Source: Obrimoposthia wandeli | Taxonomy: Eukaryota | Assembly (NCBI GenBank): GCA_977020255.1 | Contig: CDROCS010000122.1 | Span: forward strand, 186,001 to 250,000 | Reading direction: 5' to 3' | Length of the DNA stretch: 64,000 bases | Shown here: piece after piece, positions 5,187 through 20,785 of the stretch | Numbering within the stretch: the stretch's first letter is position 1 | Layout of the letters: each line of letters begins with the position of its first letter | Position numbers and translations under genes: made by a program | The notes under the pieces: generated by a model | The model's database searches: none | What the model was told of the DNA's origin: nothing | The model's input: the letters and a program-made list of their open reading frames with translations, nothing else

Positions 5187-5211
5187 ATTTTTTAATGATT
5201 AGACTCTGCCA

Positions 5212-11873: not shown

Positions 11874-13298
11874 TTATGCGTTTGCTTCACGTTCCGCAAT
11901 GAATGCCAGTGCCATCGTAATACGATTAACAACACGATCTTTACCAATCAGCATCATGGTTGCATCAACCGAAGGCGATTGGCCTTGACCGGTAACTGCA
12001 ACACGTAAAGGCATACCGACTTTACCCATACCGACTTCAAGCTCAGTACATGTGTCTGCAATCACTGTATGCAAGCTTTCAGTATTCCACTCTTCAAGCG
12101 CTTCTACTTTCGATAACACTAAAGCTAAAGCATCTTTTGCAACTGGGCGTAAATGTTTCTTCGCAGCACCGGCTTCAAACTCGCTAAAGTCTTGGTAGAA
12201 GTAACGAGATTGCTCAGCAAGTTCGATTAACGTATTACACCGCTCGCCGACTAAGCCAATGACATCGGTAATTTTAGGGCCATTTGCTGTATCAATTTCT
12301 TTTTGATCAAGGTGCCATTGCAGGTATTTCGCAACATACTCAGGTTCGGCAGTCTTGATGTAGTGGTTATTCAACCACAGTAGCTTATCTGTATTGAATG
12401 CAGACGCTGATTTACTGATTGATTCAAGGCTGAATAAGTTAATCATCTCTTCCATAGAAAAGATCTCTTGATCACCATGAGACCAGCCTAAACGGATCAG
12501 GTAATTGAGTAATGCTTGAGGTAAATAACCTTCATCACGGTATTGCATCACGCTAACCGCACCATGGCGCTTAGACAATTTAGCGCCATCATCACCCAGA
12601 ATCATTGCACAGTGTGCGAATTCTGGTACTGGTGCACCTAATGCTTCATAAATATTGATCTGACGAGGGGTATTGTTAATGTGATCTTCACCACGAACAA
12701 CCTGAGTAATACCCATATCCCAATCATCAATTACAACACAGAAGTTATATGTTGGGCTGCCATCAGTACGACGAATAATCAGATCATCAAGCTCGCTATT
12801 CGCAATTTCGATGCGACCACGTACTTTATCTTCAAATACAACCGTCCCTTCTTTCGGGTTACGGAATCGAATACAGAATGCGCTATCTTCTGTTGCAGCT
12901 GCATTTACCGCTACAATTTTTGGATGGTTAGCATCGTAACGAGGCTTAACACCCGCAGCCATTTGCTCTTCACGCAGTTCGTCTAGTAGCTCTTTCGGGC
13001 AATAGCACTTATACGCTTTATCTTCAGCTAATAGTTGATCGACCAACTGGTTATAACGATCAAAACGCTTAGTCTGGTAGTAAGGACCTTCATCCCAATC
13101 CATTCCTAGCCATTCCATGCCTTCAAGAATGGCATCGATCGCTTCTTGTGTAGAGCGTTCAAGGTCAGTATCTTCGATACGAAGTACAAATTCGCCACCC
13201 ATGTGCTTAGCAAATAACCATGAATACAGCGCTGTACGAGCACCACCTACGTGCAGAAAGCCTGTTGGGCTTGGTGCAAAGCGAGTTTTAACCGTCAT
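11874..13298 (-). CDS. gltX: Glutamate--tRNA ligase
   Basis: [14 protein letters not shown] (HIGH motif) and KLSKR. Confidence 0.98.
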
Positions 13299-13908: not shown

Positions 13909-14097
13909 TCAATAATGTGTTTTACCACCCTTTTGAGCACAGATTGTTTGAGGAACCCAACTCTCAACCGTTTGACCACTTTCCGTAGTCACCACACATC
14001 GATAGATAGGCATTGCTCCAACACCGCCAGATTGCGCAGCGAAAACAGGCACCGAAGACACAATAAATAATGTTATTGCAGTAAGAATATGTTTCAT
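13909..14097 (-). CDS. Small secreted two-cysteine peptide (copy 1)
   Basis: AAGGT RBS, Sec signal ending VFA, paralogous to 16398-16598, flanked by hairpins. Confidence 0.75.
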   Translation of the reverse strand: MKHILTAITLFIVSSVPVFAAQSGGVGAMPIYRCVVTTESGQTVESWVPQTICAQKGGKTHY

Positions 14098-14256: not shown

Positions 14257-15648
14257 TTATTTCACTGTGAATGGAATAGTCAATGTTACTTTCAAATCAG
14301 TCTCATCTTGGAATGCGTTCGAGTACGGTGCCCAGTTTCCAGCATTTGAGTCGTTAACATAGTATGTGTAGTACATACCAAAATTAGCCCCTTTCAGTGC
14401 ACCGCCTTGAATAGCATAATTTAAGAAAGCACTACCTGAGTATTCAACTAGTTCATCAATACCCGCTTGATCAGACTTAGCACCAAATGCATATACACCA
14501 TTCACACCAGCACTAAAGCCTTGTGCACCTAAGTCAGAGAAGTCACGCGCAACAGAACCGAAGACACCTAGCTCACCATCATGGTTAAAGTCAGAACGGT
14601 TATTCCACCAAATATCGTAAGCACCGTTTGAACCACCATAAACTTCAGTCAGGCGGTAAGCCATGTTACCCACGTTGCCACGAGTATCGCTTGAATCTGC
14701 CGCAGTATATGTCGCTTCAGCACGTACAGAGTACTGGCCGTAAGACTTAGCTGAAATGAATGCTAGCTGGTAAGCCGTTGAGTCGTATTGGTTATCATCA
14801 TCAACAACATAAACTTGTGGAGAAAGGTACCAACCATCAGCCGTTGTGTACTTCACTTTAATGTGAGCATTTTTACGATCGCCATCTGATAACGCTGCAT
14901 AAGCGGCATCTAACAGCAGTCCATTATCAAACGTATAACGACCACCTAATGAGTAAGCAGTGCCTGCATCTTCAGCATCTGAACCGCTTCCAGTACGGAA
15001 CTCATAGCTATCTTTGAACCAAGGTGCGCGATATTCATCAGCAACAACAAGACCTAATGCTAGGTTACCTACATTTGCGCCAATTTCACCACCAGTATAC
15101 GTACCAGCAGCGAAAGACCAGTTAACGCCCATCGCTGTCGGTACAGATGGTTGGAAGTAACCTAATTTAGCAGTTACTGCATCGCCAAATTTAAATTTGA
15201 ATGCAGCAGTCTGAAATGCTCCACCATTGTCGTTACAGCTTGTATCCCATGCACTATCACAACCACTTCTGCTGGTTGGTTCCATGTCATATGGGTTATT
15301 CACGCCCCAGAAGTTCATTTCATGATCAGGAGAAGCGTTTTGCCACAAATCAAACGTTGAATAAACGTTAAGATCTAAACCAACAGTATCAGCTACATAG
15401 CCCGAGTTAAAATCAACAGATAGATACATTGAACCGTGATCTAAATTCGGTGTTTTTGATGTGTCGTTACCATTCTCATCGACATCACCACGGGTACGAT
15501 CACGCATCCAAACATTGAGAGCGCCATTAATGGTTGAGTCTTCAATGAAGCCGCTTGCTTCAGCAGATGGCGCAACCGTTAGCGCCGAGCCAGCCACAAG
15601 ACCAACAACAAGTGTGCTAAGCATTGTACGTTTAAATATTTTTTCCAT
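14257..15648 (-). CDS. chiP: OprD-family outer-membrane porin, E. coli ChiP (YbfM)-like, copy 1
   Basis: GFIEDST start, DFNSGY, VNWSFAAGTYTG, YRAPW, SNGAYDIWWNNRSDFN, FQDETDLK; these match my recollection of E. coli ChiP motifs. Confidence 0.8.
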   Translation of the reverse strand: MEKIFKRTMLSTLVVGLVAGSALTVAPSAEASGFIEDSTINGALNVWMRDRTRGDVDENGNDTSKTPNLDHGSMYLSVDFNSGYVADTVGLDLNVYSTFDLWQNASPDHEMNFWGVNNPYDMEPTSRSGCDSAWDTSCNDNGGAFQTAAFKFKFGDAVTAKLGYFQPSVPTAMGVNWSFAAGTYTGGEIGANVGNLALGLVVADEYRAPWFKDSYEFRTGSGSDAEDAGTAYSLGGRYTFDNGLLLDAAYAALSDGDRKNAHIKVKYTTADGWYLSPQVYVVDDDNQYDSTAYQLAFISAKSYGQYSVRAEATYTAADSSDTRGNVGNMAYRLTEVYGGSNGAYDIWWNNRSDFNHDGELGVFGSVARDFSDLGAQGFSAGVNGVYAFGAKSDQAGIDELVEYSGSAFLNYAIQGGALKGANFGMYYTYYVNDSNAGNWAPYSNAFQDETDLKVTLTIPFTVK

Positions 15649-15669
15649 GGATAACTCCTAATAATAAAA

Positions 15670-15718
15670 TAGCTGTTTTTGTATACATCCTTAAGTTGGC
15701 CGCCGAAGGTCTGCATAC
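15670..15718 (-). promoter_or_regulatory. Conserved 5' leader RNA hairpin (copy 1)
   Basis: GUAUGCA-GA-CCUU[CGGCGGCCAACUU]AAGG-A-UGUAUAC then AAAAACAGCUA; same loop at 18243-18253. Confidence 0.75.
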
Positions 15719-15905
15719 AGGTTATTTATATAACGTTGTTTCAATAGGAGAAGAGGTTACAAGCTTTTTTCATTACAGAAAGTTAACGCAGAAGAATTTA
15801 TGACCGTGTTCAAATCGCATAAATACAAAAATACATTAAAAAAACAAAATCAACAACTTACAAGGAAAACATCAGAAAACATAAACGTTAAAACACTATA
15901 TTGAC

Positions 15906-15921
15906 TGTGAATCAACTCACA
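15906..15921. promoter_or_regulatory. CRP site upstream of porin 1
   Basis: Perfect TGTGA-ATCAAC-TCACA; weaker TATGA-N6-TCAAA at 15799-15814. Confidence 0.75.
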
Positions 15922-16362
15922 TAAAGCCAAATTTAGAAGGCCCAAAGTAGGCCCATCGCACGAGCACTTATAAATATACACTTTGTTTTATATTTATTGA
16001 GAGCGAAACAATGATCTACTTCGCAATTTGAAATAGACACATTGAACTAATTAGCCCGCACTTCTCTAAAATTGACGTTTTTACTTAACACATATTTAGC
16101 ATCAACAATTAAGCTGGATAAGCATTAAACATCGTCAAAAGGAATCCTGCGAATTCACATGCTTCTGATTTCCCTCAGATAACTATTATTGATAGATTGA
16201 ATAAACCATTTTGTTATCAATAGCATTAATAACCATAATTAATTTTATAGAAAGAAGTACGGAATTATAACGAACAAAAGATAGGGCTTAGATAGGAGTT
16301 ATTAAAATAAACATCTTAAGCATCAGGTTAGAACAAGTCATCGATTTAATTAAAGGCTTTAT

Positions 16363-16386
16363 AAAACCGGAGAGTCCGTTCTCCAG
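16363..16386 (-). terminator. Terminator after peptide 2
   Basis: Minus strand CTGGAGA-ACGGAC-TCTCCGG-TTTT. Confidence 0.75.
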
Positions 16387-16397
16387 CATTACACTAT

Positions 16398-16598
16398 TTA
16401 AAAATCAGCTGGATTTCCTTTCCCCCCCAGAGTTCGGCAATTAAACCAAGGTACAAAAATTGTTTCACCGGAAGGAAGTTTACAATATGTTTGGCCAAAC
16501 CCACCGCCATTACCGCCAGAAGAAGAAGCACTTGCAGGTGAAGATATTAGCAATACCATAAATAGACTTGAAGCTAGAAAAGTTAACTTGTTTTTCAT
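16398..16598 (-). CDS. Small secreted two-cysteine peptide (copy 2)
   Basis: GGGGG RBS, Sec signal ending ASA, paralogous to 13909-14097. Confidence 0.75.
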   Translation of the reverse strand: MKNKLTFLASSLFMVLLISSPASASSSGGNGGGFGQTYCKLPSGETIFVPWFNCRTLGGKGNPADF

Positions 16599-16614
16599 AT
16601 AACCCCCATAAGAA

Positions 16615-16630
16615 TGTGACTTTTGTCACG
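16615..16630. promoter_or_regulatory. CRP-like site next to RBS of peptide 2
   Basis: TGTGA-CTTTTG-TCACG, 16 bp from the ATG. Confidence 0.6.
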
Positions 16631-16731
16631 TTGAGTATAGGAGTTAATAATATACATGCCATTTTATAGAATTAATTTTCATCAAAAAATTATATACTTA
16701 ATTTACAGTTTCTTTTTTCAATACAAAATAA

Positions 16732-16757
16732 AAGTCAGCCTAAGATAAGGCTGACTT
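16732..16757 (-). terminator. Terminator after porin 2
   Basis: AAGTCAGCCT-N6-AGGCTGACTT then TTATTTT on minus strand. Confidence 0.8.
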
Positions 16758-16782
16758 AATTAAAATGCTGCTAACTAAATGA

Positions 16783-18198
16783 TTAGTTGAAGCTATAAGG
16801 AATAATTACCTGCAAGCGTAAATCAGTTTCATCTGCAGAGTTAGCCCCTGCATATTCATCACGCTCTAGCACTGTACCGTGTAAACGTACTGTTGAACCT
16901 TTTAATGCACCAGCCTGAAGAGAATATGCAACTGTTGCATTAAATGCATACTCGCTTTCATAATCCCAATCGCCCGTAGCTCCTTCAGCTGCAGATTTAC
17001 CACCCGTACCGTAACCAAAGCCTAGGTAGTAATTCCAACCATTACCTTGGTTGTAAGCAACACGGTTGTACCATGATAGTTGACCAGACTTGTTCCAATC
17101 AGATAGTGCATCCCACCATAGAGAGTAATTACCATTCGTCATACCGTAGGTATAAATCATACGAGGGTTAACATCAGCATCGTTATCACTTGATGCGTAA
17201 TTCACATCAGACATCCATGAAACTTTACCGAAGTTTGCATTAAATGACAGACCAGTTGTATAGCCAAGACCGTCATATTGATCATCATCATCTACACCGT
17301 AGAAATCATAAGCAATGGTCATAGTATCGTTAATGTTATAGCGTGCGTATACTTTATAGCCTGTCGTATCAACTTCTTCACGCTTGCCTGAAACAACGTT
17401 ATTATCCCAATCAACATTGGCATAACTAACATCAGTTGTTTGACCCAGACCAAACTGCAAGAATAAATCTTTCGTTGCATCAACCTGTAGACCTAGCGAG
17501 TGAGTGATACCCCAGCTTGTATCAGACCAAAGGGCTGGTGCGTAATCATCTTCACTTAATAACCATGGGGCTGTGTATTGATCAGCAATGAAATACGTCG
17601 CTTTCACTTTACCAAAGTTAGCATTCAATTCTGCACCACGGTATGTACCAGGAACAAAACTCCAAACATTACCAAGGGTACCGTTACCATTAGCCTGAAT
17701 CATACCGAAACGTGCATCAAAGTTTTCACCAGCTTTGAATTTTAACGCAGCCTTGTACAGCTTCAGCTGTTCACCTTCAGCTGAACCCCAATCAAGGTTA
17801 TTACAGGTTGAAATTTCATTACACAGGTACTCACCAGTATCACCATTTATCTGACTGTCGTTATATAGATCACCAGAGTAATAGCCGCCAATATCAGCAC
17901 CTAACCATCCGTCATGATAACCAGAAGTAAAGTCTAAAATGGCATTGTAAGAAGAGTAATTCAAACGGCTCCAAGTATCGCCATCCTCGCCACCAGGCTT
18001 ACCAGTAGTACGAGTACGAGCACGCGTATCAACAATAAAAGTACCATTCAAGGCTGAATCTGCCATGAACTCGTTGATAGCCTCAACGTATTGATCACCC
18101 GCTGCACTTTCTGTCGATGCCTGTACAGGCATCGCTACTACACCAAACATTGCAGCAGTTAAGGCTGAAACCTTAAATAAATTTGAACGATTTTCCAT
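16783..18198 (-). CDS. chiP: OprD-family outer-membrane porin, ChiP-like, copy 2 (divergent)
   Basis: DFTSGY, LYKAALKFK, NVWSFVPGTYRGAE, YTAPW, TNGNYSLWWDALSDWN, DETDLRL; C-terminal aromatic FN. Confidence 0.75.
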   Translation of the reverse strand: MENRSNLFKVSALTAAMFGVVAMPVQASTESAAGDQYVEAINEFMADSALNGTFIVDTRARTRTTGKPGGEDGDTWSRLNYSSYNAILDFTSGYHDGWLGADIGGYYSGDLYNDSQINGDTGEYLCNEISTCNNLDWGSAEGEQLKLYKAALKFKAGENFDARFGMIQANGNGTLGNVWSFVPGTYRGAELNANFGKVKATYFIADQYTAPWLLSEDDYAPALWSDTSWGITHSLGLQVDATKDLFLQFGLGQTTDVSYANVDWDNNVVSGKREEVDTTGYKVYARYNINDTMTIAYDFYGVDDDDQYDGLGYTTGLSFNANFGKVSWMSDVNYASSDNDADVNPRMIYTYGMTNGNYSLWWDALSDWNKSGQLSWYNRVAYNQGNGWNYYLGFGYGTGGKSAAEGATGDWDYESEYAFNATVAYSLQAGALKGSTVRLHGTVLERDEYAGANSADETDLRLQVIIPYSFN

Positions 18199-18218
18199 GG
18201 AATAACTCCTAAAAATAC

Positions 18219-18267
18219 TAGCTGTTTACTTGTGTCTTAAAGGTTGGCCGCCGAAGACATCAAGTAA
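18219..18267 (-). promoter_or_regulatory. Conserved 5' leader RNA hairpin (copy 2)
   Basis: UUACUUG-A-UGUCUU[CGGCGGCCAACCUUU]AAGACA-CAAGUAA then ACAGCUA. Confidence 0.75.
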
Positions 18268-18361
18268 CTCTCCTATATGTCAGCTCAATTATCTAAATCA
18301 AGCTAAATCATAATTTTTTAGTTCTTTATGAACTGCTGTGTTACTTCAGCTATAAGACTAC

Positions 18362-18374
18362 TTTCGCAGCGAAA
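18362..18374. promoter_or_regulatory. NagC/Mlc-like operator upstream of porin 2
   Basis: Palindrome TTTCGC-A-GCGAAA fits the TT-N9-AA pattern with a CG-rich centre. Confidence 0.4.
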
Positions 18375-18724
18375 AACATCAATAACAACTTAATTAATTG
18401 TGTGAAAAATATGACGCAGTGCAAATTTATTACACAACAGTGATCAAGTTCAAACTCTCTAGCAATAAGTTTATAAATAAATATTAAATCAAATAAAAAC
18501 AACACTTTAAATAAAAACAAAAAAGATTAAACGTGATGTAACACGAGAAAAAAAATGATTTTGTTTTTATTGGTATATGGATTTTTTAGATGTTTTAAAA
18601 ATAATTTTGAACTTTTTTAAGGAGAGAATAGTGAAAAAGAAGATAATTTGAATGGTATTAGGAAGTAAATATGAGGAAACACCTGCCTACCTTTCACAGA
18701 TAAGCAGGCTTTATCAAAACTTAA

Positions 18725-20785
<2,061 letters not shown>

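What the first reader, a model, noticed from the sequence alone, without database searches (positions are those of the whole stretch)
15670..18267. Covarying 5' leader RNA motif with invariant CGGCGGCCAAC loop in front of both porins
Seen: copy 1 (15681-15718) GUAUGCA/UGUAUAC + CCUU/AAGG; copy 2 (18226-18267) UUACUUG/CAAGUAA + UGUCUU/AAGACA. The stem sequences differ almost completely but both pair, with a bulge or small internal loop 4-6 bp below the apical loop. The 11-nt loop CGGCGGCCAAC and the following AACAGCUA are identical, and the hairpin sits about 20 nt before a UAGGAG RBS. Conserved single strands on compensatory stems are the signature of a functional RNA. Inference: an sRNA landing site (partner would contain GUUGGCCGCC), a protein-binding loop, or a ligand-sensing leader. 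It does not match any riboswitch class I know.
Basis: partly seen in the sequence, partly recalled or inferred. Interest (0 to 1): 0.8.

Follow-up and report, generated by a model that had tools for sequence, protein, structure and literature searches.

The report
MicX docking hairpin in chitoporin leaders
Each of the two chitin-porin genes has a small hairpin in its untranslated leader whose unchanging loop exactly complements the seed of MicX, a known Vibrio small RNA that represses the cholera bacterium's chitoporin, so it is a conserved docking site for a known regulator and not a new riboswitch.

Summary
Both minus-strand ChiP-like porin genes (28% identical proteins) carry a leader hairpin with the identical block CUUCGGCGGCCAAC, then AAACAGCUA and the RBS.

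A pattern scan found the same leader in 63 Vibrio and Photobacterium loci, including V. cholerae vc0972. The stems differ almost completely yet pair: 10 of 12 pairs show compensatory changes, above both controls. No Rfam family matches.

It is MicX (Rfam RF01808). Its second hairpin carries UUGGCCGCCGA, the perfect complement of loop UCGGCGGCCAA (11 bp, 8 G-C). MicX's single-stranded CAUAGCUG complements the second leader block, CAGCUAU.

Published data agree:
- MicX directly represses vc0972.
- The inactive micX deletion 196-263 removes exactly this seed hairpin.
- MicX with the vc0972 5' UTR is the most abundant Hfq RIL-seq chimera.

New points here:
- The site is mapped to nucleotides, with a loop-loop geometry.
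- The same leader fronts two unrelated porin folds (Porin_4 and OprD) and several paralogs.
- One Photobacterium relative has an identical promoter and leader with a swapped coding sequence.

MicX could not be checked in this window's own genome. It is present in related Photobacterium. Moderate interest; a new member of a known kind.

The parts
15680..15719 (-). Leader hairpin of porin A. It has an 8-bp outer stem, an internal loop and a 4-bp inner stem.
   Evidence: RNAfold minimum-energy fold, -12.5 kcal/mol, z = -2.5. Matched by covariance model R1.
15696..15706 (-). UCGGCGGCCAA, the 11-nt complement of MicX seed UUGGCCGCCGA. It lies in and next to the apical loop of hairpin A (loop CGGCGGCCAAC = 15695-15705), at -58..-48 from the ATG.
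   Evidence: Exact complementarity to five MicX sequences. Pattern location.
15669..15675 (-). CAGCUAU, within the conserved AAACAGCUAU block of leader A, at -27..-21. It complements the single-stranded MicX segment AUAGCUG.
   Evidence: The Rfam MicX consensus structure shows CAUAGCU unpaired.
15655..15659 (-). Shine-Dalgarno AGGAG of porin A.
   Evidence: Sequence. Conserved in all 60 aligned leaders.
14257..15648 (-). Porin A, 463 aa, OprD family and ChiP-like.
   Evidence: Pfam PF03573 at 1.6e-12. NCBIfam ChiP model scores 259.8 bits, below its 750-bit cutoff.
18226..18267 (-). Leader hairpin of porin B. It has a 7-bp outer stem, a one-base bulge and a 6-bp inner stem.
   Evidence: RNAfold, -13.6 kcal/mol, z = -2.0. 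R1 match of 30.8 bits, E = 5.6e-8.
18244..18254 (-). UCGGCGGCCAA, the complement of the MicX seed, in the apical loop of hairpin B (loop CGGCGGCCAAC = 18243-18253), at -56..-46 from the ATG.
18219..18224 (-). CAGCUA in the AAACAGCUAG block of leader B, at -26..-21. It complements MicX UAGCUG.
18206..18210 (-). Shine-Dalgarno AGGAG of porin B.
   Evidence: Sequence.
16783..18198 (-). Porin B, 471 aa, ChiP-like and 28% identical to porin A.
   Evidence: BLASTP 28% identity, E = 9e-42. NCBIfam ChiP model scores 146.4 bits, below its cutoff.
18199..18475 (-). Promoter-plus-leader cassette of porin B. It is nearly identical in P. indicum and P. profundum ATCC BAA-1252. The TSS has not been mapped.
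   Evidence: Three-way alignment. Near identity runs from about 275 nt upstream to ATGGA. After that the P. indicum coding sequence is unrelated.

Best explanation
Each hairpin is the docking site on a chitoporin mRNA for the trans-acting small RNA MicX. In Vibrio, MicX is made from the 3' end of malG.

The stem only has to hold the loop open, so its sequence drifts and covaries. The loop must stay complementary to the invariant MicX seed, so it is frozen.

The proposed sequence of events is as follows.
1. The 6-nt apical loop of MicX hairpin 2 (UUGGCC) kisses GGCCAA in the leader loop.
2. Pairing spreads to 11 bp (UUGGCCGCCGA with UCGGCGGCCAA) by opening the weak 5-bp inner helix of MicX.
3. 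A second single-stranded MicX segment (CAUAGCUG) pairs with CAGCUAU, just upstream of the Shine-Dalgarno.
4. Translation is blocked and the mRNA is destabilised. This keeps the porins low until chitin-induced transcription outruns MicX.

Shown here: the conservation, the covariation and the complementarity.

Shown in the literature for V. cholerae: direct repression, loss of activity when the seed region is deleted, and in vivo chimeras.

Inferred: that pairing occurs at the loop, the kissing order of events, the role of the second block, and that the same holds in this Photobacterium.
For: 1. The leader is conserved in 63 Vibrio and Photobacterium loci, always just upstream of a porin start codon. 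All 60 distinct leaders fold with the block in the apical loop.

2. Covariation is strong. Ten of 12 pairs have compensatory changes, and no shuffle or slid control reaches the observed values.

3. In diverged extra copies the invariant core shrinks to CGGCGGCCAAC. The 10 nt CGGCGGCCAA within it pair with MicX; the final C faces a MicX U.

4. The Rfam MicX consensus and 11 retrieved MicX sequences all carry UUGG(C/U)CGCCGA and CAUAGCUG. The only seed change seen, C to U in the P. lipolyticum clade, keeps a G.U pair.

5. An 11-nt exact complement is the longest match in every MicX-leader pair tested. Local duplexes score -25 to -31 kcal/mol.

6. From PMC1976385:
- MicX represses vc0972 7- to 20-fold in E. 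coli.
- The vc0972 TSS is at -137, so the hairpin is transcribed.
- micX with nt 196-263 deleted is inactive. On a V. cholerae-type locus the seed maps to nt 218-228, and the deleted 68 nt comprise the seed hairpin plus most of CAUAGCUG.
- Regulation does not need Hfq, as expected for a structured, long, G+C-rich loop contact.

7. In RIL-seq (PMC9732341 supplement), MicX with the vc0972 5' UTR is the top chimera, with 104,380 and 20,332 reads. The MicX reads start at about nt 196. The vc0972 reads run from about the base of the hairpin to the start codon. That position rests on my estimate of the ATG coordinate.

8. The same leader fronts unrelated porin folds. That is what a trans-acting regulator's module would look like.
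Against: - A vc0972 transcriptional fusion ending at -26 did not respond to MicX, while -402..+55 did. This fusion contains the whole hairpin but only CAGC of the second block. So the loop contact alone does not give repression, and the effector step needs sequence from -25 onward.
- Half of the MicX seed is base-paired inside MicX's own hairpin.
- No experiment has mutated the loop.
- MicX could not be looked for in the window's own genome.
- In P. jeanii, in a second Photobacterium group and in one Vibrio group, no MicX lies within 0.9-1.5 kb of malG, although P. jeanii has the canonical leader.
- The invariant C that ends CAAC faces a U in MicX, so pairing does not explain it.
- The longest-match shuffle control is weak, because A/U runs inflate it.
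Confidence: 0.8

Rival explanations
1. The leader, or a stable 5' fragment of it, acts mainly as a decoy that soaks up MicX. When chitin induces chiP transcription, MicX is titrated and its other targets are released, for example the chitobiose-binding protein gene vc0620. This adds to the docking-site reading more than it competes with it.
For: - MicX with the vc0972 5' UTR is by far the most abundant chimera.
- Short transcripts from the VC0972 5' UTR were recovered in an sRNA-size cDNA screen and listed as a candidate regulatory 5' UTR (PMC2836559).
- E. coli does exactly this with ChiZ, a chiP 5' UTR fragment that sponges ChiX (PMC7815308).
- Photobacterium carries up to three or four leader copies per genome.
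Against: - Deleting vc0972 together with its 5' UTR did not raise MicX levels (PMC1976385).
- No terminator-like 3' end follows the hairpin.
- Nothing here measures a stable fragment.
Confidence: 0.2
2. The loop is recognised by a protein, such as a translational repressor, ProQ, Hfq or an RNase, instead of or in addition to MicX.
For: - The invariant positions extend one base beyond the MicX complement (the final C of CAAC).
- A purine-rich RGGAR motif lies upstream of the hairpin in 41 of 60 leaders.
Against: - The exact complement in an independently invariant sRNA seed explains the loop without a protein.
- MicX acts on vc0972 in E. coli and without Hfq.
- The loop contains no GGA.
Confidence: 0.08
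3. It is a small ligand-sensing riboswitch, for example for chitobiose.
For: It is a conserved structured leader in front of chitin-uptake genes, and it matches no known class.
Against: - It is only one simple hairpin with an 11-15 nt loop.
- There is no conserved alternative pairing with the SD or with a terminator. The CUCC in Vibrio 5' arms is absent from Photobacterium arms.
- Conservation is fully accounted for by MicX.
Confidence: 0.02
4. The conserved block is a DNA operator for a transcription factor such as ChiS, or it is part of a short leader peptide.
For: - It sits between the promoter region and the gene.
- Leader B contains a 7-codon uORF (MSSAANL) with an AGGAG 9 nt upstream.
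Against: - The flanking arms covary to keep RNA pairing, which an operator would not require.
- Only 25 of 60 leaders have an upstream ATG, and these read the block in all three frames (14, 7 and 5).
Confidence: 0.03

Closest known systems
MicX sRNA with the vc0972 (chiP) mRNA of Vibrio cholerae (Davis and Waldor 2007, PMC1976385; Rfam RF01808; RIL-seq of Huber et al. 2022, PMC9732341)
   Same: It is the same leader. The V. cholerae locus L090 has the identical loop and second block. The same sRNA family supplies the complementary seed. The target is a chitin-uptake porin.
   Different: - In the papers I could search, the pairing site on vc0972 was only narrowed to 'near or overlapping the start site'. 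No paper in the library holds the loop sequence in this context.
- The window's targets are OprD-type porins, not the Porin_4-type VC0972, and there are two of them in tandem.
- Photobacterium MicX scores below Rfam's gathering score (39.6-62.8 against 75 bits). One clade has a C-to-U seed variant.
ChiX sRNA, the chiP 5' UTR and the ChiZ sponge of E. coli and Salmonella (PMC7815308; PMC13578368)
   Same: A constitutive sRNA silences a chitoporin by pairing in its 5' UTR. The E. coli porin is the OprD-type relative of the window's porins. The 5' UTR can feed back on the sRNA.
   Different: - The sRNA and the target sequence are unrelated.
- Model R1 finds nothing in the E. coli chiP leader (best hit 11.4 bits, and that lies inside glnS).
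- The window has no ChiX hit.
- ChiX pairs at the RBS region, not at a covarying apical loop.
- Vibrio is said to lack ChiX (bioRxiv 10.64898/2026.08.28.747715).
Loop-loop (kissing) initiation in antisense RNA control, such as CopA/CopT, RNA I/RNA II and OxyS-fhlA (from my own knowledge, not tested here)
   Same: Complementary sequences are presented in the apical loops of two hairpins. Pairing is G+C-rich and there is little need for Hfq.
   Different: Here the two genes are unlinked. Kissing is inferred from predicted structures only.
MalH, the malG 3' UTR sRNA of E. coli (annotated b4807)
   Same: It has the same genomic origin as Vibrio MicX (the malG 3' end) and also regulates porins.
   Different: The E. 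coli malG-malH region contains no TGGCCGCC, so MalH does not share this seed.

Membership tests
MicX target site on chitoporin mRNA (MicX-vc0972 type) | Sequence complementary to the MicX seed region, meaning the region whose deletion inactivates MicX | tested here: met
   Both window leaders carry an 11-nt exact complement (UCGGCGGCCAA against UUGGCCGCCGA). The seed maps to MicX nt 218-228, inside the 196-263 deletion.
MicX target site on chitoporin mRNA (MicX-vc0972 type) | The leader is homologous to that of V. cholerae vc0972 | tested here: met
   The V. cholerae locus L090 shares the 14-nt block, AAACAGCUA and the RBS. Model R1 scores 57.2 bits on L090, 30.8 on window leader B and 31.8 on window leader A.
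MicX target site on chitoporin mRNA (MicX-vc0972 type) | The site lies within the transcribed 5' UTR | not testable with these tools
   The V. cholerae TSS is at -137 by primer extension (data not shown in PMC1976385), and RIL-seq reads cover the region. There is no TSS data for this genome. No sigma-70-like promoter was found between the hairpin and the ATG.
MicX target site on chitoporin mRNA (MicX-vc0972 type) | A MicX gene with the seed is present in the same genome | not testable with these tools
   It is not in the 64-kb window, and the rest of the genome is not readable. It is present in Photobacterium sp. GJ3, sp. DA100, P. lipolyticum and a metagenomic relative. It was not found near malG in P. 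jeanii.
MicX target site on chitoporin mRNA (MicX-vc0972 type) | MicX-dependent repression of the downstream porin | not testable with these tools
   This is shown only for V. cholerae vc0972.
Any described Rfam cis-regulatory family or riboswitch | A match to a curated covariance model | tested here: not met
   There is no hit at the gathering score in the window. At E up to 1 over 15600-18800 the only hit is a chance mir-1010 match inside porin B.
ChiX-chiP system of Enterobacteria | A ChiX sRNA, and a ChiX-complementary chiP leader homologous to ChiZ | tested here: not met
   There is no ChiX hit in the window. The hairpin model does not match the E. coli chiP/ChiZ leader. The proteins are only distant ChiP relatives.
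Rfam RF01808 (MicX), for the Photobacterium partner RNAs | A score at or above the 75-bit gathering threshold | tested here: inconclusive
   Vibrio copies score 111-189 bits. Photobacterium copies score 39.6-62.8 bits with E from 8e-6 to 6e-12. They match full length, share the seed and the terminator, and lie in the same position after malG.

The most novel reading that the evidence does not exclude
The hairpin is a portable regulatory module, and the relationship with MicX runs both ways.

A promoter-plus-leader cassette carrying the MicX dock is kept in place while the porin coding sequence behind it is exchanged between unrelated folds (OprD-type and Porin_4-type).

The several leader copies, or stable 5' fragments of them, together act as a chitin-induced sponge. 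The sponge titrates MicX and so times the rest of the chitin regulon. This would be a Vibrionaceae counterpart of ChiZ/ChiX, reached with unrelated RNAs.
Probability: 0.2. Interest if true: 0.6.

Novelty: new member of a known kind. Interest (0 to 1): 0.4.

Why it matters
Chitin uptake is central to how Vibrionaceae live in the sea. In V. cholerae it is tied to competence and surface colonisation.

MicX with chiP is the most abundant Hfq-bound RNA pair in V. cholerae. Even so, the papers available to me do not give its pairing site on the mRNA.

This analysis places the site on a covarying hairpin loop and supplies a second contact next to the RBS. That accounts for two older results: why the 196-263 deletion kills MicX, and why a fusion cut at -26 is blind to it.

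It also shows that the same dock controls porins of two unrelated folds, and several paralogs per genome, across two genera.

That gives a precise design for compensatory-mutation tests. It also gives a clean natural example of a structured target site evolving under constraint from a trans-acting RNA.

Tried and rejected
- **MAFFT plus RNAalifold on whole leaders.** The 3' arms were out of register, and only a trivial invariant 3-bp pairing was returned. I replaced this with a covariance model built from 11 equal-length seeds.
- **RNAduplex and cofold on full-length RNAs.** Energies were dominated by long, loose pairings, and shuffles scored as well. Cofold cannot represent kissing. I used exact-match listing and short-segment duplexes instead.
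- **First dinucleotide-shuffle script.** It timed out.
- **Protein search with E. coli MalG to reach Vibrio malG loci.** The best 120 hits held no Vibrionaceae, so the search was wasted. The plasmid collection, which holds some second chromosomes, gave the first MicX loci.
- **MalG cluster P0170.** I hoped it was V. cholerae. It was not, and it has no MicX after malG.
- **V. cholerae-type MicX.** I finally obtained it by scanning metagenomes with a primer-derived 22-mer.
- **Leader peptide idea.** Rejected.
- **Anti-SD switch idea.** The CUCC in Vibrio 5' arms is not conserved in Photobacterium, so I rejected it.
- **Antisense terminator reading of the hairpin on the plus strand.** No U-run follows it in the window.
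- **Earlier-findings look-ups.** Searches by words and by sequence gave nothing on a partner RNA.
- **Full-text search for the loop sequence.** It returned only unrelated papers.
Full report
**What is in the window.**
Two genes lie on the minus strand between ligA (18725-20755) and gltX (11874-13298). They are 14257-15648 (463 aa) and 16783-18198 (471 aa). Porin A matches the OprD porin family. Both match NCBI's enterobacterial ChiP model, but far below its cutoff. The two proteins are only 28% identical.

Hairpin A is at 15680-19, that is 15680-15719, and hairpin B is at 18226-18267. RNAfold gives each as the minimum-energy fold. CGGCGGCCAAC occurs nowhere else in the 64 kb, even allowing one mismatch.

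Aligning the two upstream regions shows three shared blocks in otherwise unalignable DNA: CUUCGGCGGCCAAC, AAACAGCUA and UUAGGAGUUAU. Blocks this well kept in front of such diverged paralogs already argue for constraint on the leader.

**How widespread it is.**
I scanned one genome per species for TTCGGCGGCCAAC, a gap of 8-30 nt, then AACAGCT.
- 63 loci are Vibrio or Photobacterium. The other 57 are chance matches inside genes of G+C-rich organisms.
- In every Vibrionaceae locus the match sits just upstream of an RBS and a porin-like start.
- L090 is V. cholerae, and its gene is vc0972.
- L104, P. profundum ATCC BAA-1252, is almost identical to leader B. So the window comes from that species or a close relative.
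- The C before UUCGG was not part of the search pattern, yet it is invariant in all 60 distinct leaders.

**The downstream genes fall into three classes.**
BLASTP finds no similarity (E up to 1e-3) between the first class and the other two.
- About 350-aa VC0972-like porins, Pfam Porin_4.
- Relatives of window porin B.
- Relatives of window porin A (OprD family).

A 2026 structural survey treats the Vibrio and enterobacterial chitoporins as convergent, OmpC-like trimers against OprD-like monomers (PMC13578368). One leader therefore serves two unrelated folds.

**Structure and covariation.**
All 60 distinct leaders fold with the conserved block in the apical loop, although the stems share almost no sequence.

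I built a covariance model from 11 equal-length seeds. It recovered 61 leaders at E up to 5e-4, including both window copies. On that alignment:
- 85.5% of cells pair, against 69.1 +/- 1.2 in shuffles.
- 10 of 12 pairs show changes on both sides.
- 108 cells have changes on both sides, against 38 +/- 7 in shuffles (0 of 500 reach it) and 10-22 when the partner column is slid.
- The covariation score is 0.469, against 0.19 for shuffles and at most 0.16 for slid partners.

The alignment was fitted to the model, which favours the structure. The margin over both controls is large all the same.

The model also found weaker copies beside other porin paralogs. In those, the U before CGG can be A or C, and the second block can read UACAGCUA or CCAGCUA. 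CGGCGGCCAAC never changes.

A coding explanation fails. Only 25 of 60 leaders have an upstream ATG, and they read the block in all three frames. No Rfam family matches.

**The partner.**
Vc0972 is the classic target of MicX (PMC1976385). I reached malG 3' regions through second chromosomes filed in the plasmid collection.

Rfam then identified MicX in Vibrio sp. THAF190c at 188.7 bits. The printed family consensus shows a second hairpin whose apex reads UuGGu-UUGGCC-gCCgA. UUGGCCGCCGA is the exact reverse complement of UCGGCGGCCAA in the leader: 11 Watson-Crick pairs, 8 of them G-C.

Six of those pairs (UUGGCC with GGCCAA) lie loop against loop. The other five need the weak inner helix of MicX to open, and that helix contains two G.U pairs.

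The same consensus shows CAUAGCU as a single-stranded internal loop. AUAGCUG complements CAGCUAU in the second leader block, at -27..-21 in leader A.

Both MicX segments are invariant in the five Vibrio and two Photobacterium copies first retrieved. They are also invariant in V. cholerae-type loci found by scanning metagenomes with a primer-derived 22-mer.

P. lipolyticum, which has canonical leaders (L038, L067), and a related metagenomic Photobacterium carry UUGGUCGCCGA. This single transition turns one G-C pair into G.U and keeps the duplex.

Short-segment duplexes score -25 to -31 kcal/mol.

**Agreement with published experiments.**
From Davis and Waldor (PMC1976385):
- MicX lowers vc0972 reporter activity 7- to 20-fold in E. 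coli, so the effect is direct.
- Transcription starts at -137, which is upstream of the hairpin.
- micX with nt 196-263 deleted is inactive.

On locus L151, which matches four of their primers exactly, +1 falls at 5191. The seed is then nt 218-228. The 68 deleted bases run from UCUCUUC to GCAUA, which is the whole seed hairpin plus most of CAUAGCUG.

Their fusion ending at -26 keeps the hairpin but cuts the second block after CAGC (primer vc0972R3). It does not respond to MicX, while -402..+55 does. I read this as follows: the loop is the docking contact, and repression needs the RBS-proximal part. It is also the main caveat to the model.

Their finding that Hfq is dispensable for regulation fits a structured, long, G+C-rich contact.

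In Hfq RIL-seq, MicX with the vc0972 5' UTR is the most abundant pair, with 104,380 and 20,332 chimeras. MicX reads begin at about nt 196-237. The vc0972 reads span 1037792-1037864. With the ATG near 1037851-1037860, that span runs from the hairpin to the start codon. I inferred the ATG position from the -137 TSS and the leftmost reads, so this mapping is approximate.

An sRNA-size cDNA screen had already listed the VC0972 5' UTR as a candidate regulatory leader (PMC2836559).

**What remains open.**
- MicX is not in this window, and I could not read the rest of the genome. Its presence here is inferred from relatives.
- MicX is not always next to malG. It lies 0.4-0.8 kb downstream in three of the genomes examined.
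- MicX was not found within 0.9-1.5 kb of malG in P. jeanii, another Photobacterium group and one Vibrio group.
- The final C of CAAC and an upstream RGGAR motif (41 of 60 leaders) are not explained by the pairing.
- The TSS in Photobacterium is unknown.

**Comparison with known systems.**
The closest system is MicX-vc0972 itself. The window adds OprD-type, tandem targets in another genus.

Functionally it parallels ChiX-chiP-ChiZ in E. coli, where a constitutive sRNA silences an OprD-type chitoporin through its 5' UTR and a 5' UTR fragment sponges the sRNA (PMC7815308). The RNAs are unrelated, though. The hairpin model finds nothing in the E. coli leader, and a recent preprint states that Vibrio lacks ChiX.

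**Verdict.**
I found no description of the site's structure or its spread in the papers available to me. This is a useful refinement and not a new kind of element.

Noticed in passing
window 18199-18475 (-) compared with L015:2214-2490 (-) and L104: P. indicum has the same ligA-adjacent promoter and leader, about 275 nt nearly identical and the leader 100% identical. Identity stops right after ATGGA. Its coding sequence is a 377-aa Porin_4-type chitoporin, not the window's 471-aa OprD-type porin B. The porin gene has been swapped behind a retained regulatory cassette.
   Followed up: partly
window 16398-16598 (-) and 13909-14097 (-); L139:3275-3478 (-): Each porin is followed by a small ORF (66 and 62 aa) with a signal peptide, an SGG stretch and two cysteines. 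Photobacterium sp. DA100 has a similar-looking 67-aa ORF between malG and micX. The three-way alignment is weak (about 40% identity, mostly in the signal peptide), so kinship is not established.
   Followed up: partly
L132:2831-3026 (+); L140:2391-2590 (+): MicX of P. lipolyticum and of a related metagenomic Photobacterium has the seed variant UUGGUCGCCGA. Against the unchanged leader loop this makes a G.U wobble in place of a G-C pair.
   Followed up: yes
L137 (P. jeanii), L133-L136, L144-L149: No MicX-like sequence lies within 0.9-1.5 kb downstream of malG in these Vibrionaceae, although P. jeanii has canonical leader hairpins (L062). Either MicX is elsewhere in those genomes or another RNA uses the loop.
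   Followed up: partly
window about 18268-18285 (-) and the equivalent position in 41 of 60 leaders: A purine-rich RGGAR motif (AUAGGAGAG in leader B, AAGGAAAU in many Vibrio) lies a few bases upstream of the hairpin. In Vibrio it is complementary to the conserved UUCCUU in the MicX third hairpin loop (6 bp). It could be a third contact, an Hfq or CsrA site, or chance.
   Followed up: no
window 18240-18263 (-): Leader B holds a 7-codon uORF (MSSAANL, then stop) that reads through the loop, with AGGAG 9 nt upstream. The same uORF recurs in a few Photobacterium leaders (MPSAANL, MSSAANQ, MPSAANH), but it is absent or in another frame in most leaders.
   Followed up: yes
L121:2532-2634 (-), E. 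coli K-12: E. coli also makes an sRNA from the malG 3' end (MalH), but that region has no TGGCCGCC. The malG 3' UTR sRNAs of the two lineages do not share this seed.
   Followed up: partly
L044:5231-5270, L020:4001-4036, L022:6863-6900, L068:7587-7622, L062:3360-3379: Photobacterium genomes carry additional, slightly diverged leader copies in front of further porin paralogs within a few kb. A single MicX could therefore control three or four porin genes per genome.
   Followed up: partly
L151:978-1027 (-): The V. cholerae-type metagenomic contig that carries MicX also has a malK-II RNA motif (Rfam RF03008, 72.7 bits) upstream in the maltose locus.
   Followed up: no
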